DNA of 64,000 bases from Euprymna scolopes (lineage: Eukaryota): the NCBI GenBank assembly GCA_053919585.1, contig CM132791.1; one strand, given 5' to 3'. Under the pieces are notes generated by a model. That model did no database searches. It had not been told where the DNA came from and saw only the letters and a program-made list of their open reading frames with translations. The stretch's first letter is position 1; each line of letters opens with the position of its first letter. The position numbers were made by a program, and so were the translations under genes. Below are positions 14,791 through 36,232 of this stretch, piece after piece.

Positions 14791-15950
14791 TTAAAATCTA
14801 TGAATCTATAGTATGTAATTGATTCCAATATTGATAGCTGAATAAAAATAAAAAAATATATAAGCCTTTGACACAAGCACTTATTTGATTAGATCTTCGG
14901 AAAATGAAAGTAATACTATGAAAATAAAAAAGTCAACCAGTTTAGTATGTAAAAATATGGTGAATAGAACATTCTAAAATTAATTTATCGCCATACTGGA
15001 AGTAAATCATAAACACTGTCTAAAATGTAAAGCAAAATGTGGAAATACTGAATATCAAGACCGTTTTCTTTTATAAATGTTTAAACCGCATTTGCGTAGC
15101 GATATAACTTGTGATATTTCTAGGCTAGACAGTCATGTAGAATAGTGAAAAATGACTTCAAAAAGAATGTTCACTCTTTGAAATTGATTTTCATTTCTAG
15201 ACACACGTTGCCATTAACCACAAATTTTATTCAATATTTGTTATGCCGCGCGCACACGTTGAACTGTTCAAATGAATTACATTATTTTCCTAGCAGAATT
15301 CTATGTATCTAAAAGAGAATGTTATTTGAGTGTTGTATTTGAATAAACCTATTATTTTTCAATAGAAATCTGTCTCCCATTTCAATTTTAAAAACATGAA
15401 AGATTTGTGATTCAAACAGCTTTTTTATCTCGCATAAAACTAAATTAAACAAAATACATTCTAACTCACTAGCCTCATTCTGCATCTCATACTAATCTAA
15501 TAATTGCTTTATGTAGTAATATTCTTACTACGATTATATTAAACACCTAAGTAAATAAAGCTGCATCGCAACTTAAATATAAATTTTCTATTTTATGTTT
15601 TGTATTCTTTAAAACATTTTGCTTTAAAGTGAAATAAAACTTTAACTCTTTTTCATTGTAATTAATTCAGTTTCCTAGATTATTTTTTTATTTTTCCTTT
15701 CTCGAACATATATTGTATAAAATCGGTTCCAATACATATCACTTGTTAATTAAATTCAAATTATAATTCCTTACTTTATTATGTGTCATACTACGATTTG
15801 CATCTATCACTGTTATTATGAACTCCTAAAGTAACTGAGGTCTGGCTCAGAATTTATACTTCTTTACTTTCGTAAATTTAAATATTAAATATGTGTTTGT
15901 AGGGTATTCTGTAATTTAATCATGAATTCTTCGCGTAGTACCCAGTTTTA
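14790..15950 (+). repeat. Diverged ~1.15-kb duplication, copy A (12174-12349 also matches 19654-19830)
   Basis: Collinear with 19895-21080, e.g. cacttatttgattagatc, ttcatttctagaca(c/t)acgttgccattaa, tttttatctcgcataaaactaaattaaacaaaat. Confidence 0.9.
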
Positions 15951-19894: not shown

Positions 19895-21080
19895 GGATCG
19901 TATGTAGGTGCTTGAAATTATAAATCTAAATATATAGTGTTTCATTGATACGAATATAAGTAGCCGAATAACAATAGAAAAATATATAAGCCATTGATAC
20001 AGGCACTTATTTGATTAGATCATCGGAAAATAAAAGGAAAGATATGAAAGTAAAAACGTCAAATAATTTGGTATGTAAAAATCTAGTGAATGGAACATTT
20101 TTCAAATGAATGTTACACCATACTGGAAATAAATCATAAACAATGTCTGAAATGTAAAGCAAAACATAAAATTACTGAACAGCAGAACCGTTGCTTTTAT
20201 AAATTGGAAAATCGCATTTACGTAGCAATATAACTTGTGACATTTGAATGCTAGACAGTTATTTACAATAGTTAAAATGCCTTCAAAAAGAATTTTCACT
20301 CTGTGAAATTAACTTTCATTTCTAGACATACGTTGCCATTAATCACAAATCTTATTCACTATCTGTTATGTCGGGCGCGCATGATGAAATGTACGAATGA
20401 ATTACGTCATTTTCCATAGCAGTATTCTACATATCTAAAGCGTTAATTTATTGAGTGTTGTATTTGAATAAACCCCATTGTTTTACAATTTTGGAATTTA
20501 ACAAACATCAAAGATTTCTGAATGTTGCCATGAGAGATTTTAACAGTTTTTTATCTCGCATAAAACTAAATTAAACAAAATTTATCTTAGTTTCCCAGCA
20601 TCGTTTTATCCTTCATACTATTCTGTTAATTATTTTAGATTATAATAGTGTAGCTACGATTTTTATGAAACCTAAATAAATAAAGCTGTCTTTCAAATAT
20701 ACATTTTCTATTTTTCTGTGTTGTATTCTTGAAAACATTTTGCTTTAAAATGCAATAAAAGTTAAACTATATTTCATAGTAATCAATTCAGTTTTCTAGA
20801 TGTTTTTTTTTATTTTATAATTTTTACTTGTGCGAAAACATTTAAAATATTGTAAATAATTGTTCTAATAAATATTACTTCTTAATTAAAGTAAACTTAT
20901 AATTCCCTACGTTAGTATGACCATATATCATTGTTTATAGGAACTGTAAAAGTTAATAGATCACTTATTTAGTTATCTAAATAAAAACATTATTGTGTTT
21001 TTGTAGTGTGCCTTGGGCCTTAATTTAAAATTCGCCACGTAGCAGTAAATTCGTCAGATAGCATTCTGTTTTAGCCATAA
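19895..21080 (+). repeat. Diverged ~1.15-kb duplication, copy B
   Basis: Collinear with 14790-15950. Confidence 0.9.
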
Positions 21081-27422: not shown

Positions 27423-27541
27423 ATAGAATAGAATAAAAATTTACAAGCCACATTTTTTTTCAATCTTTAAAAATTTCAATAAAACATTAAAGGCGGTGCC
27501 TTTTATAAGCAATTAAAATTTACATAATTACACACTACAAA

Positions 27542-28246
27542 TGTTAAAGAGCATCTCTCCTCTCTCTCTCTCTCTGGCTCTTTCATACTCTCTCTATTTT
27601 CTCTCTCTGTGTCTCTATTAGATAGTAGATCGAGAGAGAGAGGGAGAGGGTGGGAGGAGGTCAGAGAGATATTTTTGTAGTAAATCCACGTTGCAGGAAG
27701 TGACGTTTCATCTAACCGGATGTCATGTGATGCTACGTGGCAAGGTTGGTGAAACGTTGAGTCTCTCAGAAAATGCCAAGCCGAGCAGAAGTCTAAAATG
27801 GTTCTCTCCTAAGTAAGGGGGAGATGCGCGCCCCAGACGTGGGACGTGGTAGGTACCCACAGTGGAGACCATCGATGGCGACATCTGCAGATCATGCCTG
27901 GGAGAATAAAAGGTTGAAAACCCAACATCTGTCTTCATCTTGTGTATTCCGGCGAAAACAGCAAGAGAGCTCCACCCAGATGAAGACTCTCCCAGAGCAG
28001 CAAAACCAGGTATGAACTTCTATATATAAACACATACATCCACAAGTGTCCTAACCACCAGACAAACGGTTTAAGGGATTTTGGGTCCCGTTCTCTCGTC
28101 TCTTAACACTTGTAATATCTCTCTCTCATCGTCGTAAACTTTTTCTCTTCATTAGTAAAATGGACACGTCATCACCAGGGTACCAGTATCCTTCAAGTAA
28201 AGTGTCCAAAGTCCAAATCCGTTTCTTCTCCCTCCCTTATGTAACA
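27542..28246 (+). repeat. 5' LTR
   Basis: tgtta...taaca termini; about 3 visible differences from the 3' LTR; TATA-like tatatataaa at 28021. Confidence 0.95.
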
Positions 28247-28257
28247 TATCTGTTATT

Positions 28258-28303
28258 TGGTGCCGTGACCAGGATTCGAACCTGGGTTACCACGGCCATA
28301 ACG
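28258..28303 (+). promoter_or_regulatory. Primer-binding site complementary to tRNA-His(GUG), extended to 46 nt
   Basis: Reverse complement is cgttatggccgtggtaacccaggttcgaatcctggtcacggcaCCA, the 3' part of an invertebrate tRNA-His including CCA. Confidence 0.92.
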
Positions 28304-29801
28304 AGAAAAAGAGATAACGAGGAAAAATAAAGACAAGAAGAGAAATTGAGGAAAAAGGAGGGAGAAAAAAACGGAGAAGAGACAGTGGAATAAAAAAAGA
28401 AAGAATAGTGAAAATGAAGAGAAAAAGAGAATAAATGAAGAACAGTGAAAAACGGGTAGAGAGAGAGAAAGATAGAGAGAGAGAGGAAGGAAGAAGAAGG
28501 AAAAAAGATAGCAAAGGCATGAAGAATACCATACGCATTTAGAAGAAAATTAAACTCCAAAATTAAAAATACGCTGTAAGCTTTGAAAACGACTGAAAAA
28601 CAAAAGAGAAAAGAAAATTAATTTACCATATTAAAAATAAAAATAAAATTGAAAAACACAGAGAAAGAATTGAAGACACGGAGAAAGAAAAAAAACGTAT
28701 ATATATATTTAAATAGACAAGACAACACAAACGAACAATGTTGAAGCAAATGACATCGAGCTTGTCCACAGTTTATAAACCTGTCAGTCATTTGACATTG
28801 TTGAATTTAGCAAAGCGTTACAAAAATAAGGGACAGTGAACTTTTAAATGCATTCGGAATAGCAAGATGTCATTTTAGATTTGAAAAAAAGAAAAAAAAG
28901 AAAGAAGAAATTACACTATTGTCGAAAGTATTAGGTGATAAATAAAAATCAGGTTGGTGATGTGGCATCCCTCCGGATTAATTTTAAGTAAATTATAATT
29001 ATATGAATAGAATAGAAGCGGAACTTTTTAATTTAATTCTGTGGTTAATTGTAAAAGAATAATGATTTTTTTTTAGTTTCAGAAAACCCTTGAACTTTGC
29101 TTACGTGGACAATTTGATCTGTGATAATTTTGTTGAACTTTGCTGAAAGTTGTTAGTTATAAGTGAATTAATTAAGTATATATTAATTAAGTATTATTGA
29201 ATATTGTTAAGTATTGTTGAGTTGCCATGTGTATTTTTCTGTATTTCTTTTTCTGTACTTTTGTTATCTTGTATTTGTATAGCAGATGGGGGCATCGATG
29301 GTCTTGCCACGTGGTGTCAATGTAATTTAATTGTTTTAAAAATAAGATGATGACAGGATAGAGGTATATCAATTATCAATAATAATTTTTGAGATAACGG
29401 GATTATGCAAGGAAAACATAAATGAGAATTTTAAAATGGGATGATGTCGGAAGACAAAAGAATAAGGAATAAGGATTTTTTTATCGAAATACAGTAGTTG
29501 GACAGGCAGACGGTTTGCTGGATTATGAGTAATGAGGTCAGGAAGTCAGTCGGTATTTATCCTAGTTTCGAGGTGGTCATGTATACATATTTTTTTTTTG
29601 TTTGTTGTTTTGTTCTTGTAGTTTCGACAGAATTTTTTTGTTCCGGATGCGTAAGTCGGTGGAGGGCGATACAGAACGTCCTCGTAATAAATTAAAAAAA
29701 AAATCCATATTTTGGTAGGTGCTCAGGGAAGCACGAGATAGTTATAGAGAAATGGGCGATCTCTGTAACTAATATGGACAGTCGGAGGACATGTCCATTG
29801 T

Positions 29802-29882
29802 GTGTTGACCACACAAATGTAAATGGGGTAGAATAAATAAAGGTGTTGACCACACAAAGGTAAATGGGGTAGAATAAATAAA
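29802..29882 (+). repeat. 41-bp tandem duplication inside the LTR element
   Basis: gtgttgaccacacaaa(t/g)gtaaatggggtagaataaataaa x2. Confidence 0.9.
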
Positions 29883-30324
29883 ACCGACTTGATTACTCTT
29901 GGACCAATTAAGTATAGTCATAGAGGAGGTAAATTAATTAAGAACATTTGATGTGAAATGGTGAAGGTTTGGGATGGGATTTTTTGTTGTTGTTTTTGTG
30001 CTACCTAGGAGTAAAGAAGATTGTCCGTAAATCCTGAGATGTAAGTAGGAGGCAGATGGACCTCGATTTTGTGTTTTATTGTTGTTCGGCTAGGAGCCGT
30101 GAAATTATCGACCACGAGTAGTGTCGACTGGGAGCAAAGGATGCTCTGGAAGTCCCGAGATGGGTACGAAGAAGCCATGGGGGGCATAAAGGAGTTTGAC
30201 CTTGAAGAGCGCAGGGTAGCGCTACATGGCAATTTTATTGTTGTATTTATTTAATTTTGAGTTTATCGATTTATCGTAGGACAGTCTTCTTGCCAGCGGG
30301 TAGCGTATGTATTCCCTCCTTAGT

Positions 30325-30390
30325 TTAGTTAGTTAGTTATTAAAAATGTATGGCTTTGCCATACATTTTGATAAAAAAGGGATGGAGGAA
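30325..30390 (+). repeat. Internal copy of the hairpin+PPT block
   Basis: aaaatgtatggc-ttt-gccatacatttt then aaaaaagggatggaggaa; nearly the same as 32781-32845. Confidence 0.9.
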
Positions 30391-31635
30391 GAATTTTAGA
30401 AGTAAAATGTTACCCTATTGTGAATTAAAGGTACCAAATTTAAAAAAAAAAACATGCTGGGTGAATTTAATTGGTATTATTAAAATAAATTATTTTGGAA
30501 TAGATTTGGTTGGTTTAGTTATATTTTAGGGACGTTTAGCGCGTAGTTGCATTTTTTTCATGAGAATTACAAGGCGATTAGGCTGTAGAAAGCAGTTTTT
30601 CTGTTGTTTTATTTTTTTTATAAGCCACGGTATTGTCGCAAATTAGAAAATTTGGCAGGGGAAATACTATTTTAGAGTAATGAGTACCCTGTTAAAACAA
30701 TACTACTGGTTCCAGTGAGTTGGAAGATGCCACGTAGGCCCAAGCAACGGCAATAAGTCTTGTCCAACAAAAGTCTGGCGTGCGAGGTCGCGATAATTCC
30801 TCAGGGTACGGAGCGACTGGACAGTCGGTACCAAGCCTAATCACGGGGAGATAGAAGAAAGGGAAAGATGCAGATTACGTAAGGGACAAGATAGAGCCTT
30901 ATTATTTTTTAAATTTTTTTAGAGGAATGTGTGAGGGATATCTGGGTTGGCATCTTGGGACTTGCTGGGAATACGGAAAAATCACAAAGGGAAAGCTACT
31001 TAGTTAGAAATCGATGCGCAAGTAAGCTTTGGCGCTTTAGTTAGGGAGTGATGATTCCGTATCTTGTCGGGTTCCAGGAACTCAAACAGGCTCCGAGTGA
31101 ATCAGTGTGAAGGCGTATCTTGGCTTAGACCAACCAAGGGAGTTAGTAGAAGAGCTTTATGAAGTCCCAAAGTAGTAGATTGAATAGGACAAAGCTCCAA
31201 TAATAGGACCACTCAGAGAAAGACGTCAGGGCATTACAGTAGCAGTATCAGAATTTTTGTAGGAATTTTTGACACCCCTAACACGAAACTGCGAATACAA
31301 TATAAAAATCTCGTAATTTCTCTGTTAAAAGTGGGTTATTTATTTTCTTTATGGATTATACTTCCAAAATAAACTATTACAGTTGTTTTAAAAGTAATAA
31401 AAATATTTTTATTTTTTTTTAAAACAGTAATGAATTTTCCGAACTCAATATTTTTCAATTTTTAAACTCAATATTTTTAAATTTTAAAAATCTATAAAAA
31501 TTTTTCTATTGATTCTATTTTTACGATATTTTCAGGGTCAATGTGAAATTTTATGTTCTTTCCAATAAACCGAATATAATATTTTAGACAAACGTTTTTT
31601 TAAAATTCACGCCCCCCCATTTTCACGCCCCCCCC

Positions 31636-32270
31636 CATTTTGAAATGTCTATTAAAAAGTAAATAATTAATTTATGTTTAATAGGTTTATATATCACAAA
31701 TTGAAGAGAAAAGGTCAATAAATAATATATTCAAATTTAAAACAAAAAAAAAATCAGTTTTTTAGAAATTTACCTGTAAAGTCCGAAGTTTAAAACCTTA
31801 TTTTATAAGAACACATTTTTTCTTTTTGTCTTTTTTTTTTTTTTAATGAAACCTTGGTCCTTGCTCCTTTAATTGAAAAAAAATTAGGGCTTGAATTACA
31901 TTTTTCGAGGAGTTATAAGCTTAGAAAGATAGGGGGTCGAATAATTTACGCCTCTCATTTTGAAATGTCTATTAAAAAGTAAATAATTAATTTATGTTTA
32001 ATAGGTTTATATATCACAAATTGAAGAGAAAAGGTCAATAAATAATATATTCAAATTTAAAACAAAAAAAAAATCAGTTTTTTAGAAATTTACCTGTAAA
32101 GTCCGAAGTTTAAAACCTTTTAAAAAAAAAAAAAAAACATTGTTTTGTTTTGTTTTTTTTAAAAAATAAAACCTTGGTCCTTACTCCTTTAATTGAAAAA
32201 AAAAATTAGGGCTTGAATTACATTTTTCGAGGAGTTATAAGCTTGGAAAGATGGGGTGGAATTATTCACT
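31636..32270 (+). repeat. 320-bp tandem duplication inside the LTR element
   Basis: cattttgaaatgtctattaaaaagt... at 31636 and 31956. Confidence 0.9.
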
Positions 32271-32356
32271 ATTTTCACGAAATTTCTGACACTGCTAGCA
32301 TTACAGTAAAGGAAAAAAAACTGGGACTTAGGCCTATGCTGAAAGTCGAGAACGCG

Positions 32357-32429
32357 AGTGGGATGGTTGGGTCGGTAGAGTATCAGACTTTTAATCTGAG
32401 GGTCTGGGGTTCGAGTCCCCATGCGGTAA
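32357..32429 (+). pseudogene. tRNA-Lys(UUU)-derived sequence (pseudo-tRNA or SINE head)
   Basis: Perfect anticodon arm tcaga-cttttaa-tctga and T arm tgggg-ttcgagt-cccca; acceptor and D stems do not pair. Confidence 0.8.
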
Positions 32430-32827
32430 AGCTACCACCAACATGGAGCATCCGACGTTCTGGTCGTAATTGCGATATGCTGGCCCCATTTCGAAAAAGT
32501 GATCGAAAATGGAGTCTCCATTTGTTTGGCCAAGTGGTCCAAATAAAGAGCAGAGTCAGTGGAAAATATCCAACAATGCGACCGCCTAGACAAGATGTAT
32601 ATCTGCAAAGCTGTATCTTTGTCTAACTTGGAAGCAAGTTAATGTCGAGGAGGGACTTTCGAGAAGCAGCAGAAGGATTGATAGTGTTGTAGAAGAGTGC
32701 TGGTGCCTGATCTTTCTTGGAAAAGGGGTGAGTCCGGAAAGTGAAAGAATAAAGATGTACTTCGGACATAATTATTTTTTTTAGTTAGTTAGTTATTAAA
32801 AATGTATGGCTTGCCATACATTTTGAT

Positions 32828-32845
32828 AAAAAAGGGGTGGAGGAA
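32828..32845 (+). promoter_or_regulatory. Polypurine tract
   Basis: aaaaaaggggtggaggaa directly abuts the 3' LTR. Confidence 0.9.
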
Positions 32846-33555
32846 TGTTAAAGAGCATCTCTCCTCTCTCTCTCTCTCTCTCTGGCTCTTTCATACTCTC
32901 TCTATTTTCTCTCTCTGTGTCTCTATTAGATAGTAGATCGAGAGAGAGAGGGAGAGGGTGGGAGGAGGTCAGAGAGATATTTTTGTAGTAAATCCACGTT
33001 GCAGGAAGTGACGTTTCATCTAACCGGATGTCATGTGATGCTACGTGGCAAGGTTGGTGAAACGTTGAGTCTCTCAGAAAATGCCAAGCCGAGCAGAAGT
33101 CTAAAATGGTTCTCTCCTAAGTAAGGGGGGAGATGCGCGCCCCAGACGTGGGACGTGGTAGGTACCCACAGTGGAGACCATCGATGGCGACATCTGCAGA
33201 TCATGCCTGGGAGAATAAAAGGTTGAAAACCCAACATCTGTCTTCATCTTGTGTATTCCGGCGAAAACAGCAAGAGAGCTCCACCCAGATGAAGACTCTC
33301 CCAGAGCAGCAAAACCAGGTATGAACTTCTATATATAAACACATACATCCACAAGTGTCCTAACCACCAGACAAACGGTTTAAGGGATCTTGGGTCCCGT
33401 TCTCTCGTCTCTTAACACTTGTAATATCTCTCTCTCATCGTCGTAAACTTTTTCTCTTCATTAGTAAAATGGACACGTCATCACCAGGGTACCAGTATCC
33501 TTCAAGTAAAGTGTCCAAAGTCCAAATCCGTTTCTTCTCCCTCCCTTATGTAACA
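32846..33555 (+). repeat. 3' LTR
   Basis: Direct repeat of 27542-28246. Confidence 0.95.
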
Positions 33556-33619
33556 CAAACACAGTTACACACAGGCACAGGGTTGGCTCTTTCTCAACGT
33601 GCGAATACAAATACATACG

Positions 33620-34170: not shown

Positions 34171-34202
34171 ATTATGGATAAATAATTGCAAAAAACTCAG
34201 GG

Positions 34203-36232
34203 TTTTATTTTACATGGAGTTCACCAATTATCAAGGCCCAATGGGCACTCAGGGATAAGGGTTATTGTGTGTACAGTAATCAAAGGGATAGTGTAGCAAT
34301 AGTATTGGAGAATTGTAAGGTGTCATTACTTAGGGGGTGGCGGTTCATCAGGAATTTGTTTGTTTTGGAGGTGAAGACATCCAGATTAAAGTCGGGAGGG
34401 AGACAGGCAAGCGGAACAGAGTTCCATAGGCGTGCAGTTCTAAGAAAGAAGCTTTGTTCATGGTATCTACGTTTTGATTTTGGCACAGATAGGAAGTAGG
34501 GAAAATTATTGACAGTGGTTTCAGCTAGTCGGGTGTTTTTTGAGAAAGATTGGCGAGGGGGGACCAGAGAATGGAGCTCAGACGAGCACCTGCCATGGAA
34601 ATAACGATAGAACAATGGCAAGCCGGCTACATCTCTTCTGTGGGAAAGAGGTTGCAGGGTAGAGAAAAGGGCATCCCCCACCAAGCCACGGAGTCTATTT
34701 TGTACTCCGTCAAGGCAGGATAGGCTGTTTTTTGCAGTCCCCGCCCAGATAGTGAAGCAGTACTCCATCTTTGGACGTACTTGGCTCTTGTATAGATAGA
34801 GAATTGCATCATTAGTGAGATATCTTCTGGAGCGGTAAAAGGATCCCACCATTTTCTCAGCGACCTTGGCCACAGACTTGATGTATGTGTTCCATTTAAG
34901 ATCAGGAGTAAAAGTCAAACAATAGAGCTTATCAAATCCTGGGGCCTCTCTTAGACGAGAGCCATTCATTTCAATTGATGCCAGATGGGGATCAGAGCGT
35001 TTATGATGTAGAGATAGGAGATTTGTCTTAGATGCATTAAAGTTAACCAACAACCTCTTTCCCCACTGCACCACGCGCTCAAGATCAGAGACGAGAGAAT
35101 CAGAGAGAACATCATCATTTAGGTCCTTTTATGTGTTGCCATAGATGGTCGTGTCATCAGCATAGATGTCAACGAAAGATTTTAGTATGTGTTTTGGGAG
35201 ATCATTGATGTAGATCAGGAAGATAGTTGGGCCCAGTATGGACCCTTGAGGGACTCCAGCATTAATAATGTGGGCCTCTGATTTCTGCCCATCAACCACT
35301 ACCCTTATGAGCCTATCTGAGAGAAATGACTTAATGATAGAGAAAACATTTCCAGTTATACCGTAGCTGGAAATCTTGTGTAGTAGGCCTTTATGCCAAA
35401 CCTTATCGAAGGTCTTTGATATGTCGAGAGCAATTGCCCTAGAAATGAAGTCTTTGTCGAGAGATTCGCTAATCCTATGACATATAACCGTTAGCACATC
35501 TGCTATAGATCTAGCAGAGCGGAAACCATATTGCGTGTCGCTAAGAAGTTTATTTCTGCTGGGGTGGTTGACTACTTCTCTATTTATTGTGGATTCCAGC
35601 AACTTACTCATGGCACACAGGAGACTTATTGATCTGTAATGAAAGAGGGATGACTTATGACCTTAAATACAGGGCATACTTATGAGGTTTTCCAGGGTGT
35701 TGGAAAGCAGTTCTCCTTAAGGGAACTTTACACAGTTTGGAAAGTATGGGGGCAAGTTCTGGTTGTAAATTTTTTAACACTATAATTGGAATACCGTCGG
35801 GACCAGTTGCTTTACTGAAGTCAAGGTTCTTGATTATCTATGCGAACTCCCGCACAGATATTTGTATGTTTCATAGCGTGCTGTCTGTTATAGGAGGGAA
35901 TATGGGGAGTTGATTGCCTTCGTCAAATATGGTAGAATTTGCCACAAAGTTTTTGGCAAATAGTTTGGCCTTGTCAGATGCTGTAGAGATGACCTCTGGT
36001 TCATTGATAATGGTTGGAATAGAGCGCACGTTTCTGTTTAAGATCCTATTTGCTATTTGGCAGAACTGGTGGGAACCAAGCCGCTGCTCAGCTAATTTGG
36101 ACTTAACGGATTGTGCATATAGCTCTCTTGCATTTTTTATTACTCTTTTACAGTGGTTGCTTACGGTTCTGAAAGCAGCTTTAGTTTCAGTGCATCTATT
36201 ACGTTGGTAGCTATGGAAAAAGTGATTTCTGT
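34203..36232 (-). mobile_element. 5'-truncated CR1/L2-group LINE, copy 1
   Basis: RT motifs QYGFRSARS, ALDISKTFDKVWH, GVPQGSILGP, IYADDTT; A-rich tail at about 34203. Confidence 0.93.

What the first reader, a model, noticed from the sequence alone, without database searches (positions are those of the whole stretch)
28242..28303. Primer-binding site extends 46 nt along tRNA-His, with its only mismatch at the wobble base
Seen: complementarity to mature tRNA-His starts at CCA and runs through the T arm and variable loop across the anticodon loop. Against the invertebrate tRNA-His sequence as I recall it, the single difference is anticodon GTG to ATG. The PBS is separated from the LTR by 11 nt that form a small hairpin with the LTR end (taaca-tatc-tgtta). 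Known: PBSs are usually 18 nt or less because m1A58 stops copying of the primer, and G34 of tRNA-His is normally queuosine. Inference: either RT read through m1A58 and m1G37, mis-copied Q34 and fixed the product, or the element is selected for extended primer pairing. Such a site could out-compete the helper for primer or bind 3' tRNA halves.
Basis: partly seen in the sequence, partly recalled or inferred. Interest (0 to 1): 0.7.

Follow-up and report, generated by a model that had tools for sequence, protein, structure and literature searches.

The report
tRNA-His primer copied into retroelement
One very young copy of a non-coding LTR retroelement in a mollusc genome has had the start of its leader overwritten with a 39-41-base copy of its own tRNA-His primer. 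This is a natural fossil of reverse transcriptase reading past its usual stop in the tRNA, in a family whose other copies carry only a decayed version of the same tract.

Summary
Window 28258-28303 matches 45 of 46 bases of the reverse complement of this genome's own tRNA-His, CCA included. It lies 11 nt behind the 5' LTR of a 6014-bp non-coding LTR element (27542-33555).

The interpretation needs changing. At least 127 family copies carry a decayed form of the same tract:
- one extra T after the first 9 bases;
- 26-30 nt of foreign sequence replacing the T-loop part;
- one extra A and three substitutions.

They also carry the same T at anticodon position 34. The "wobble mismatch" is therefore inherited and was not mis-copied in this event.

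The window copy is 98-99.6% identical to those copies outside the tract. It shares a 22-nt deletion with two of them, so its clean tract is derived.

The best explanation is that plus-strand strong-stop DNA read through tRNA position 58 to position 37-35, and that this product was inherited.

A sister family has one copy with a fresh 73-nt tRNA-His copy that at least 35 siblings lack. Other families show similar fossils. The scan noted a related fossil elsewhere in this genome (s1-292384).

This is a new variant of a known process. Independent read support for this one copy could not be obtained.

The parts
27538..27541 (+). target-site duplication CAAA, left copy (right copy at 33556-33559)
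   Evidence: Read directly.
27542..28246 (+). 5' LTR, 705 nt, TGTTA...TAACA termini
   Evidence: Differs from the 3' LTR by one substitution (28080), a 4-nt (CT)n indel and a 1-nt G-run indel.
28247..28257 (+). 11-nt spacer between the LTR end and the primer site; forms a weak hairpin with the LTR end (28242-28255)
   Evidence: A 10-11-nt spacer ending in ATT recurs across tRNA-His-primed families.
28258..28275 (+). canonical 18-nt primer-binding site, complement of tRNA-His positions 76-59
   Evidence: Other families in this genome stop at 17-19 nt.
28276..28298 (+). read-through extension, complement of tRNA-His positions 58-35. Together with 28267-28275 it replaces the family's decayed version. 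Informative differences run from just after 28266 to 28296.
   Evidence: alignment A1.
28299..28303 (+). inherited remnant of an older tRNA-His copy (positions 34-30), with T at position 34 shared by the family
28304..28700 (+). purine-rich, non-coding leader shared with the family
30320..30386 (+). internal copy of the last ~65 nt before the 3' LTR, polypurine tract included; suggests a two-module composite interior
   Evidence: Read. A relative (L042) joins its primer site to window position ~30409.
32363..32422 (+). tRNA-Lys(UUU)-like segment without an acceptor stem, inside the element
   Evidence: Rfam tRNA, 35.8 bits, E 8e-5.
32828..32845 (+). polypurine tract directly before the 3' LTR
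   Evidence: Read.
32846..33555 (+). 3' LTR, 710 nt

Best explanation
The element belongs to a tRNA-His-primed, non-coding LTR family. The family's leader begins with an old, decayed antisense copy of tRNA-His. In the retrotransposition that made this copy (or shortly before), plus-strand strong-stop DNA did not stop after 18 nt. It kept copying the tRNA still attached to the minus strand, passing A58 and reaching position 37-35. Its 3' end could pair with the family's own tRNA-like remnant on the minus strand, so it was extended. The plus-strand version was then inherited. This overwrote the decayed stretch, including the 26-30-nt foreign insert, with clean tRNA sequence up to the point where copying ended. 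The T at position 34 and everything downstream come from the parent. What is shown: the tract, the decayed state in relatives, the derived status of the clean state, and its restriction to one copy. What is inferred: which strand carried the copy, and why it ended at 37-35. Possible reasons for that end point are a stall at a modified G37, run-off on a 3' tRNA half, or an arbitrary repair boundary.
For: (1) The tract matches the genome's own tRNA-His at 45/46 positions, CCA included. (2) All 29 fetched relatives carry the same decayed tract. Of the 100 listed rows among 127 genome-wide hits, 97 show the family letters at positions 48, 44, 37 and 34, and only the window shows the tRNA letters at 48, 44 and 37. 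(3) Outside the tract the window copy is 98.0-99.6% (LTR) and 97.3-99.1% (interior) identical to relatives. Inside 28266-28296 it differs at 10 or more positions plus three indels (A1). Scattered differences confined to 31 nt fit a single templated replacement, not gradual divergence. (4) The window copy has the shortest mean distance in a star-like family. It shares a 22-nt deletion and four substitutions with L016 and L037, which have the decayed tract, so the clean state is derived. (5) The same-LTR relatives that carry a corrected 17-20-nt primer site continue with sequence other than the family's decayed tract. Four distinct junction types (L042; L043=L040; L044/L046; L048=L041) lead into later family sequence at 0-6 nt of homology with the end of the tRNA copy, for example CAGGAT at window 29355. 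That homology exists only in the tRNA copy, not in the decayed parent site. Two others (L047=L039, L049=L038) continue with sequence that was not placed. (6) Independent parallels exist. L002, in a sister family with a 100% identical 3' LTR 3.1 kb away, has a fresh 73-nt tRNA-His+CCA copy and a duplicated spacer that at least 35 siblings lack. L004 has a private full-length copy at an LTR end. L060 and L071 have decayed extended tracts, and L071's ends at position 37. Genome-wide, 22 sites carry TGG plus at least 25 nt of tRNA-His. (7) Ty1 and Ty3 do not inherit the primer's sequence, and they accumulate tRNA-extended plus-strand 'dead-end' products (PMC5371799). That explains both the persistence of the decayed site and the rarity of copies like this one.
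Against: No independent read or contig spans the clean tract into the unique downstream context. The four public runs laid were Logan contigs, which show only the decayed family form and tRNA genes. The modification state of tRNA-His in this animal is unknown. Position 37 was copied correctly, which is not the usual outcome at m1G. Mismatch repair could have set the right-hand boundary, so the true end of read-through is not fixed. Only 29 of at least 127 copies were aligned in full.
Confidence: 0.75

Rival explanations
1. The extended tRNA-His complementarity is a selected, functional bipartite primer site: 13 nt, then a hairpin that skips A58, then a second segment pairing with the T-stem, variable loop and anticodon stem. 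On this view the window copy is simply its best-matching member.
For: Three families (the window's, L002's and L060's) keep the order primer site - insert at the T-loop - remainder of antisense tRNA-His - purine-rich leader. The inserts of two of them fold as 5-bp hairpins with different stem letters, GCCCC/GGGGC versus GCATC/GATGC. Ty1 and Ty3 use bipartite sites (PMC5371799).
Against: The second segment carries mismatches and indels in every family. Most tRNA-His-primed families sampled have nothing beyond 17-19 nt. The perfect form is found once in at least 127 copies, so it is not what selection maintains. Shared descent plus occasional refreshing explains the pattern without function.
Confidence: 0.12
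2. DNA-level ectopic gene conversion from one of the ~370 tRNA-His genes or a retro-copy overwrote the tract after integration.
For: Many donor genes exist, and the decayed tract keeps 36 of 40 alignable positions.
Against: Homology is only 13 nt on one side and 28 nt on the other side of a 26-30-nt insert. The element is very young, with one LTR substitution, which leaves little time. The tract starts in register with the CCA-bearing primer site. The L002 parallel includes CCA and a duplicated spacer, which no gene donor can supply.
Confidence: 0.06
3. The clean tract is ancestral and the decayed form arose once in a sub-lineage that produced all other copies.
For: The window copy is close to the centre of the family's star phylogeny.
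Against: It shares derived characters (a 22-nt deletion and four substitutions) with copies that have the decayed tract. A sister family has a homologous decayed tract with an insert at the same place. Ten or more differences confined to 31 nt beside 0.3-0.7% divergence in the flanks cannot accumulate gradually.
Confidence: 0.03
4. Assembly or polishing artefact: reads from the many tRNA-His genes were mis-mapped onto this copy.
For: About 370 near-identical tRNA-His genes exist, and no independent contig confirms the junction.
Against: Only 1 of at least 127 equivalent targets is affected. The change removes a 26-30-nt insert cleanly. It stops before position 34 instead of continuing into gene sequence. 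The analogous L002 junction is seen in an unrelated RNA-seq run (X14, record 16 and its loose end).
Confidence: 0.04

Closest known systems
Retroviral plus-strand strong-stop DNA, which copies 18 nt of the primer tRNA and stops at m1A58
   Same: The geometry is the same: LTR, short spacer, then the complement of the tRNA 3' end starting at CCA. Most families in this genome stop at 17-19 nt. The role of m1A58 as a stop, and increased read-through when it is lost, are discussed in PMC8599865.
   Different: Here the copy runs 39-41 nt, past position 58 and through position 37, and it was fixed in a germ-line insertion. In sister elements the whole tRNA was copied.
[quoted passage not shown]
   Same: A primer site that no longer matches the tRNA beyond 9 nt persists in at least 127 copies. 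That fits inheritance from the RNA genome and not from the primer.
   Different: This copy, and the relatives that carry a corrected primer site, show the opposite outcome: the tRNA-extended plus strand was used. Whether this family's unknown helper is Ty3-like was not determined.
Bipartite or extended primer sites (Ty1 boxes, Ty3 5'-3' site, HIV-1 primer activation signal; engineered tRNA-His-using HIV-1 needing anticodon complementarity, the last from my own knowledge)
   Same: There is complementarity to the primer beyond the 18-nt site, including the T-arm and anticodon-stem sides.
   Different: Those contacts are short, conserved and functionally tested. Here the extension is a contiguous templated copy in one element and a decayed relic in its relatives.
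Ohshima/Okada model deriving tRNA-headed SINEs from retroviral strong-stop DNA with its primer (recalled from memory; not found in the paper library)
   Same: The antisense tRNA with CCA is joined through a spacer to U5. Full-length examples (L002, L004) have exactly the proposed arrangement.
   Different: The window tract lacks the D-arm (A box), was not found outside an LTR context, and is not a dispersed SINE family.
3'-tRF targeting of primer sites (review PMC7472051)
   Same: A perfect antisense match to the tRNA 3' end would be a target for 18-22-nt 3' fragments, and here also for ~40-nt 3' halves.
   Different: No small-RNA data were examined, so this is only a possible consequence.

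Membership tests
LTR retrotransposon, non-autonomous (LARD-like) | Two direct long terminal repeats with TG...CA termini | tested here: met
   27542-28246 and 32846-33555, TGTTA...TAACA
LTR retrotransposon, non-autonomous (LARD-like) | Target-site duplication | tested here: met
   CAAA on both sides
LTR retrotransposon, non-autonomous (LARD-like) | Primer site complementary to a tRNA 3' end near the 5' LTR, and a polypurine tract before the 3' LTR | tested here: met
   28258 onward against tRNA-His; polypurine tract at 32828-32845
LTR retrotransposon, non-autonomous (LARD-like) | No gag/pol coding capacity | tested here: met
   Longest ORF is 137 aa and overlaps the tRNA-like region. Relatives L038 and L039 have no ORF of 150 aa or more.
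Canonical 18-nt tRNA primer-binding site | Complementarity ends at tRNA position 59/58 | tested here: not met
   Uninterrupted match runs 41 nt, 45/46 overall
Antisense tRNA-derived SINE head | Occurs dispersed without the LTR; has both A and B boxes | tested here: not met
   The 46-mer with up to 3 mismatches occurs at 7 genome sites: this copy, tRNA genes and CCA-bearing retro-copies. The D-arm is absent from the window tract.
tRNA-His gene or pseudogene | Full cloverleaf, no encoded CCA, own flanks | tested here: not met
   ARAGORN finds no tRNA in the window. The tract includes CCA and only positions 76-30.
Functional bipartite/extended primer site (Ty1/Ty3/HIV type) | Extra tRNA-complementary segments conserved among family members | tested here: inconclusive
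   A decayed second segment is shared by three families, but with mismatches and indels
Functional bipartite/extended primer site (Ty1/Ty3/HIV type) | Extra segments required for priming | not testable with these tools
   Needs biochemical or genetic assays

The most novel reading that the evidence does not exclude
This clade of tRNA-His-primed elements may be a natural record of where reverse transcriptase stalls or runs off on its primer in vivo. Fresh tracts end at 59/58, at 37-35 (window copy and L071), or near the tRNA 5' end (L002, L003, L004). Old tracts carry foreign inserts exactly at positions 63-58 (three families) and at 38-37 (the L002 family), and a substitution at 37 (the window's family). 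If those end points reflect m1A58 and m1G37, or the 5' end of a 3' tRNA-His half used as primer, then the genome holds a readable footprint of primer modification or fragment use. It would also hold the proposed raw material (tRNA joined to U5) for new tRNA-headed SINEs.
Probability: 0.2. Interest if true: 0.75.

Novelty: new variant of a known kind. Interest (0 to 1): 0.55.

Why it matters
The 18-nt length of retroviral primer sites is explained by a stop at one modified base of the tRNA. What happens when that stop fails has been studied mostly in vitro or in engineered cells. Here a wild genome preserves the before state (at least 127 decayed copies) and the after state (one overwritten copy) of such a failure, with parallel events in sister families.

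This shows that tRNA-extended plus strands can be completed and inherited in an animal germ line. It also shows that a leader resembling the primer makes such products acceptable, and that a family can keep an imperfect primer site for many cycles.

The case offers a way to map read-through end points against tRNA-His modifications or tRNA halves. It also gives concrete examples of the tRNA-plus-U5 arrangement invoked for the origin of SINEs.

Tried and rejected
- ARAGORN on the window found no tRNA.
- Rfam found only the tRNA-Lys-like piece at 32363-32422. Its weak microRNA hits lie on the (CT)n/(GA)n part of the LTR and are low-complexity noise.
- A tRNA-His(AUG) primer as the source of the T at position 34 is unlikely. 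One such gene exists against 369 GTG copies, and it carries a second change.
- Public runs gave no independent support. All 24 runs listed were Logan contigs. The four that were laid cover the family LTR and the decayed tract (poly-A RNA libraries included) and the tRNA genes, but none bridges the clean tract into its downstream context. This is neither confirmation nor contradiction.
- L003 and L006 (CCA-bearing antisense tRNA-His copies) have no LTR repeat within 10 kb on the side I hold, so I do not count them as LTR-linked.
- No gag/pol helper was found in the 1.5-4 kb behind 30 tRNA-His primer sites, so the superfamily is undetermined.
I did not try to read them another way.
- Four paper searches found no earlier description of naturally fixed primer read-through in LTR elements. 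The two Lauermann and Boeke papers are not held and are cited only through PMC5371799.
- The fold of 28225-28320 is not better than shuffles.

Full report
**The element**

- Two direct repeats, 27542-28246 and 32846-33555, differ by one substitution (28080), a 4-nt (CT)n indel and a 1-nt G-run indel.
- They begin TGTTA and end TAACA, and are flanked by CAAA on both sides.
- A polypurine tract (32828-32845) abuts the 3' repeat.
- The 4.6-kb interior has no ORF above 137 aa.
- This is a very young, non-coding LTR retroelement of 6014 bp, as another note of this scan also said (s1-247394).
- Run labels call the host a mollusc. The assembly is 5.9 Gb.

**The observation**

Eleven bases after the LTR end, 28258-28303 reads as the reverse complement of tRNA-His from CCA inwards. 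I compared it with the genome's own genes instead of a remembered sequence. The genes come from a tandem array on contig 40 (L007, eleven genes in 3 kb) and a single gene (L005), both called tRNA-His by ARAGORN.

The match is 45 of 46 and nothing similar occurs in shuffles. Using standard tRNA numbering, which I inferred from the gene sequence:

| Window position | tRNA position |
|---|---|
| 28258-28260 | CCA |
| 28275 | 59 |
| 28276 | 58 |
| 28296 | 37 |
| 28299 | 34 |
| 28303 | 30 |

The only mismatch is T at 28299. The small hairpin between the LTR end and the spacer is real but weak and is not conserved in sister families.

**What the relatives show**

A search of the whole genome with 28060-28420 returned dozens of copies (757 first-look candidates). 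All 29 that I fetched have the same LTR end and spacer, followed by a decayed version of the tract (alignment A1):
- TGGTGCCGT, then an extra T, then GACC;
- 26-30 nt of foreign sequence with a small GC hairpin, in place of positions 63-58;
- the rest of the tRNA complement, with an extra A and substitutions at positions 48, 44 and 37;
- the same T at position 34.

A pattern search leaving those four positions free found 127 sites. Of the 100 listed:
- 97 carry the family letters;
- one differs at position 44;
- one has C at position 34;
- only the window carries the tRNA letters at 48, 44 and 37 together with the family's T at 34.

The extension is therefore a family trait in decayed form. 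The T at position 34 is inherited, and the clean form is private to this copy.

**Direction of change**

Outside the tract the window copy is 98.0-99.6% identical to relatives in the LTR and 97.3-99.1% in 1.4 kb of interior. Against the state shared by most copies, it differs at:
- 2 LTR positions, one of them a post-insertion change;
- about 10 interior positions;
- 10 or more positions plus three indels within 28266-28296.

It has the shortest mean distance in a star-like family. It shares a 22-nt deletion at 28501 and four substitutions with L016 and L037, both of which have the decayed tract. Scattered differences confined to 31 nt, in a copy nested among decayed ones, mean that the decayed tract was replaced in one step by tRNA sequence.

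**How it most likely happened**

In reverse transcription, the plus strand started at the polypurine tract copies U3-R-U5 and then the tRNA still attached to the minus strand. It normally halts after 18 nt. In this genome 17-19 nt is indeed the rule in about 20 other tRNA-His-primed families.

I propose that the plus strand ran on here to position 37-35. Its 3' end (...GGCCA) could pair with the family's own relic (...GGACA) on the minus strand, so it could be extended. The plus-strand version then survived.

This accounts for several features:
- the left register at CCA;
- clean removal of the insert;
- the correct letters at 48, 44 and 37;
- the return to family sequence at position 34.

The informative differences run from just after 28266 to 28296, so at least 39 nt of primer were copied, and 41 at most if the primer had G34.

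The same-LTR relatives give supporting detail. Those that carry a corrected 17-20-nt primer site continue with sequence other than the family's decayed tract.
- Four distinct junction types (L042; L043=L040; L044/L046; L048=L041) lead into later family sequence at 0-6 nt of homology with the end of the tRNA copy. An example is CAGGAT at window 29355.
- That homology is present in the primer copy but absent from the decayed parent site.
- Two others (L047=L039 and L049=L038) continue with sequence I could not place.

Persistence of a site that matches the primer for only 9 contiguous bases fits what is described for Ty1 and Ty3. There the primer's sequence is not inherited, and tRNA-extended plus strands accumulate as dead ends (PMC5371799). 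Copies like this one would be the rare cases in which such a product was used.

**Recurrence**

- L002, in a sister family, has LTR, spacer, a fresh 73-nt tRNA-His+CCA copy, the spacer again, and then that family's own decayed tract with an insert at the same T-loop place.
  - Its 3' LTR lies 3.1 kb away at 100% identity.
  - At least 35 siblings run straight from the spacer into the decayed tract.
  - Its junction also appears in an unrelated RNA-seq run.
- L004 has a private full-length copy at an LTR end.
- L060 has an 18-nt site, a ~29-nt insert, then a decayed copy reaching the acceptor 5' strand.
- L071 has a tract ending at position 37, followed by an inverted copy of its own spacer and site.
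- Genome-wide, 22 sites carry CCA plus at least 25 nt of tRNA-His.
- Another agent of this scan described tandem decayed antisense tRNA-His cassettes behind an LTR elsewhere in this genome (s1-292384).

**What remains open**

- Why copying ended at 37-35 is not known. It could be a stall after a modified G37, run-off on a 3' half, or a repair boundary.
- A tRNA-His(AUG) primer is unlikely: 1 gene against 369.
- Whether the old tract has a function is unresolved. Two families keep a hairpin with different stem letters, but most families have no extension, and the perfect form is not what persists.
- I could not confirm the clean tract in independent reads, fetch more loci, or find the coding helper.
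No N was filled. No merged or mended version of the element was built or printed, and copies were compared only site by site.

**Verdict**

Read-through is supported. A mis-copied wobble base is not, and neither is selection for a perfect 46-nt site. This is a natural, datable instance of a known side reaction of reverse transcription, set in a clade where it recurs.

Noticed in passing
window 32363-32422 (+): A tRNA-Lys(UUU)-like segment without an acceptor stem lies about 430 nt before the 3' LTR (Rfam tRNA, 35.8 bits). The same region is present in relatives L040, L042 and L043. It may be a captured tRNA or a SINE head.
   Followed up: partly
window 30320-30386 compared with 32779-32845: An internal copy of the last ~65 nt before the 3' LTR, polypurine tract included, splits the interior into two modules. 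Relative L042 joins its primer site to about 30409, just after this copy.
   Followed up: partly
window 28247-28257; L042-L071: A 10-11-nt spacer ending in ATT separates the LTR's terminal CA from the tRNA-His site in many families. The usual distance is 0-5 nt, so an unusually long overhang would have to be removed from the U5 end before integration.
   Followed up: partly
L007 (G000:C40:48.03-48.06 Mb) and G000:C3:12.68-12.99 Mb: There are very large tRNA-His gene clusters: a tandem array with a ~284-bp period on contig 40, and a looser cluster on contig 3. Together they give 369 exact hits to a 22-nt gene-specific word. One array member reads ATG at the anticodon.
   Followed up: partly
L002:1600-1910: Behind its primer site, the sister element has tandem ~105-nt units built from pieces of antisense tRNA-His (positions 34-20, 44-38 and 12-5) separated by A-rich filler.
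   Followed up: no
L071 (minus strand), 1506-1560 in element orientation: The tRNA-His-derived tract ends at position 37 and is followed by an inverted copy of the spacer and the start of the site. It looks like a snap-back product.
   Followed up: no
L059 and L061: The spacer plus primer site is duplicated a short distance downstream, a second site after (TA)n or A-rich filler. This resembles the duplication in L002.
   Followed up: no
window 31631-31883 and 31951-32203: A 253-nt tandem duplication (90% identity) lies in an AT-rich part of the interior.
   Followed up: no
window 27560-27670 and 32868-32980: The U3 part of the LTR holds a (CT)n run facing a (GA)n-rich run. This draws weak, meaningless microRNA hits from Rfam.
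   Followed up: yes
window 34200-36200 vs 42200-44200; 14800-15700 vs 19930-20820: Two further pairs of direct repeats are spaced 8.0 kb (79-92% identity) and 5.1 kb (74-86% identity) apart. They may be older LTR pairs or segmental repeats.
   Followed up: no
Read laying X14, records 13-14, on window 27620-28434: Contigs from poly-A RNA libraries carry the family's LTR and the decayed tract, so the family may be transcribed. DNA carry-over is not excluded.
   Followed up: partly
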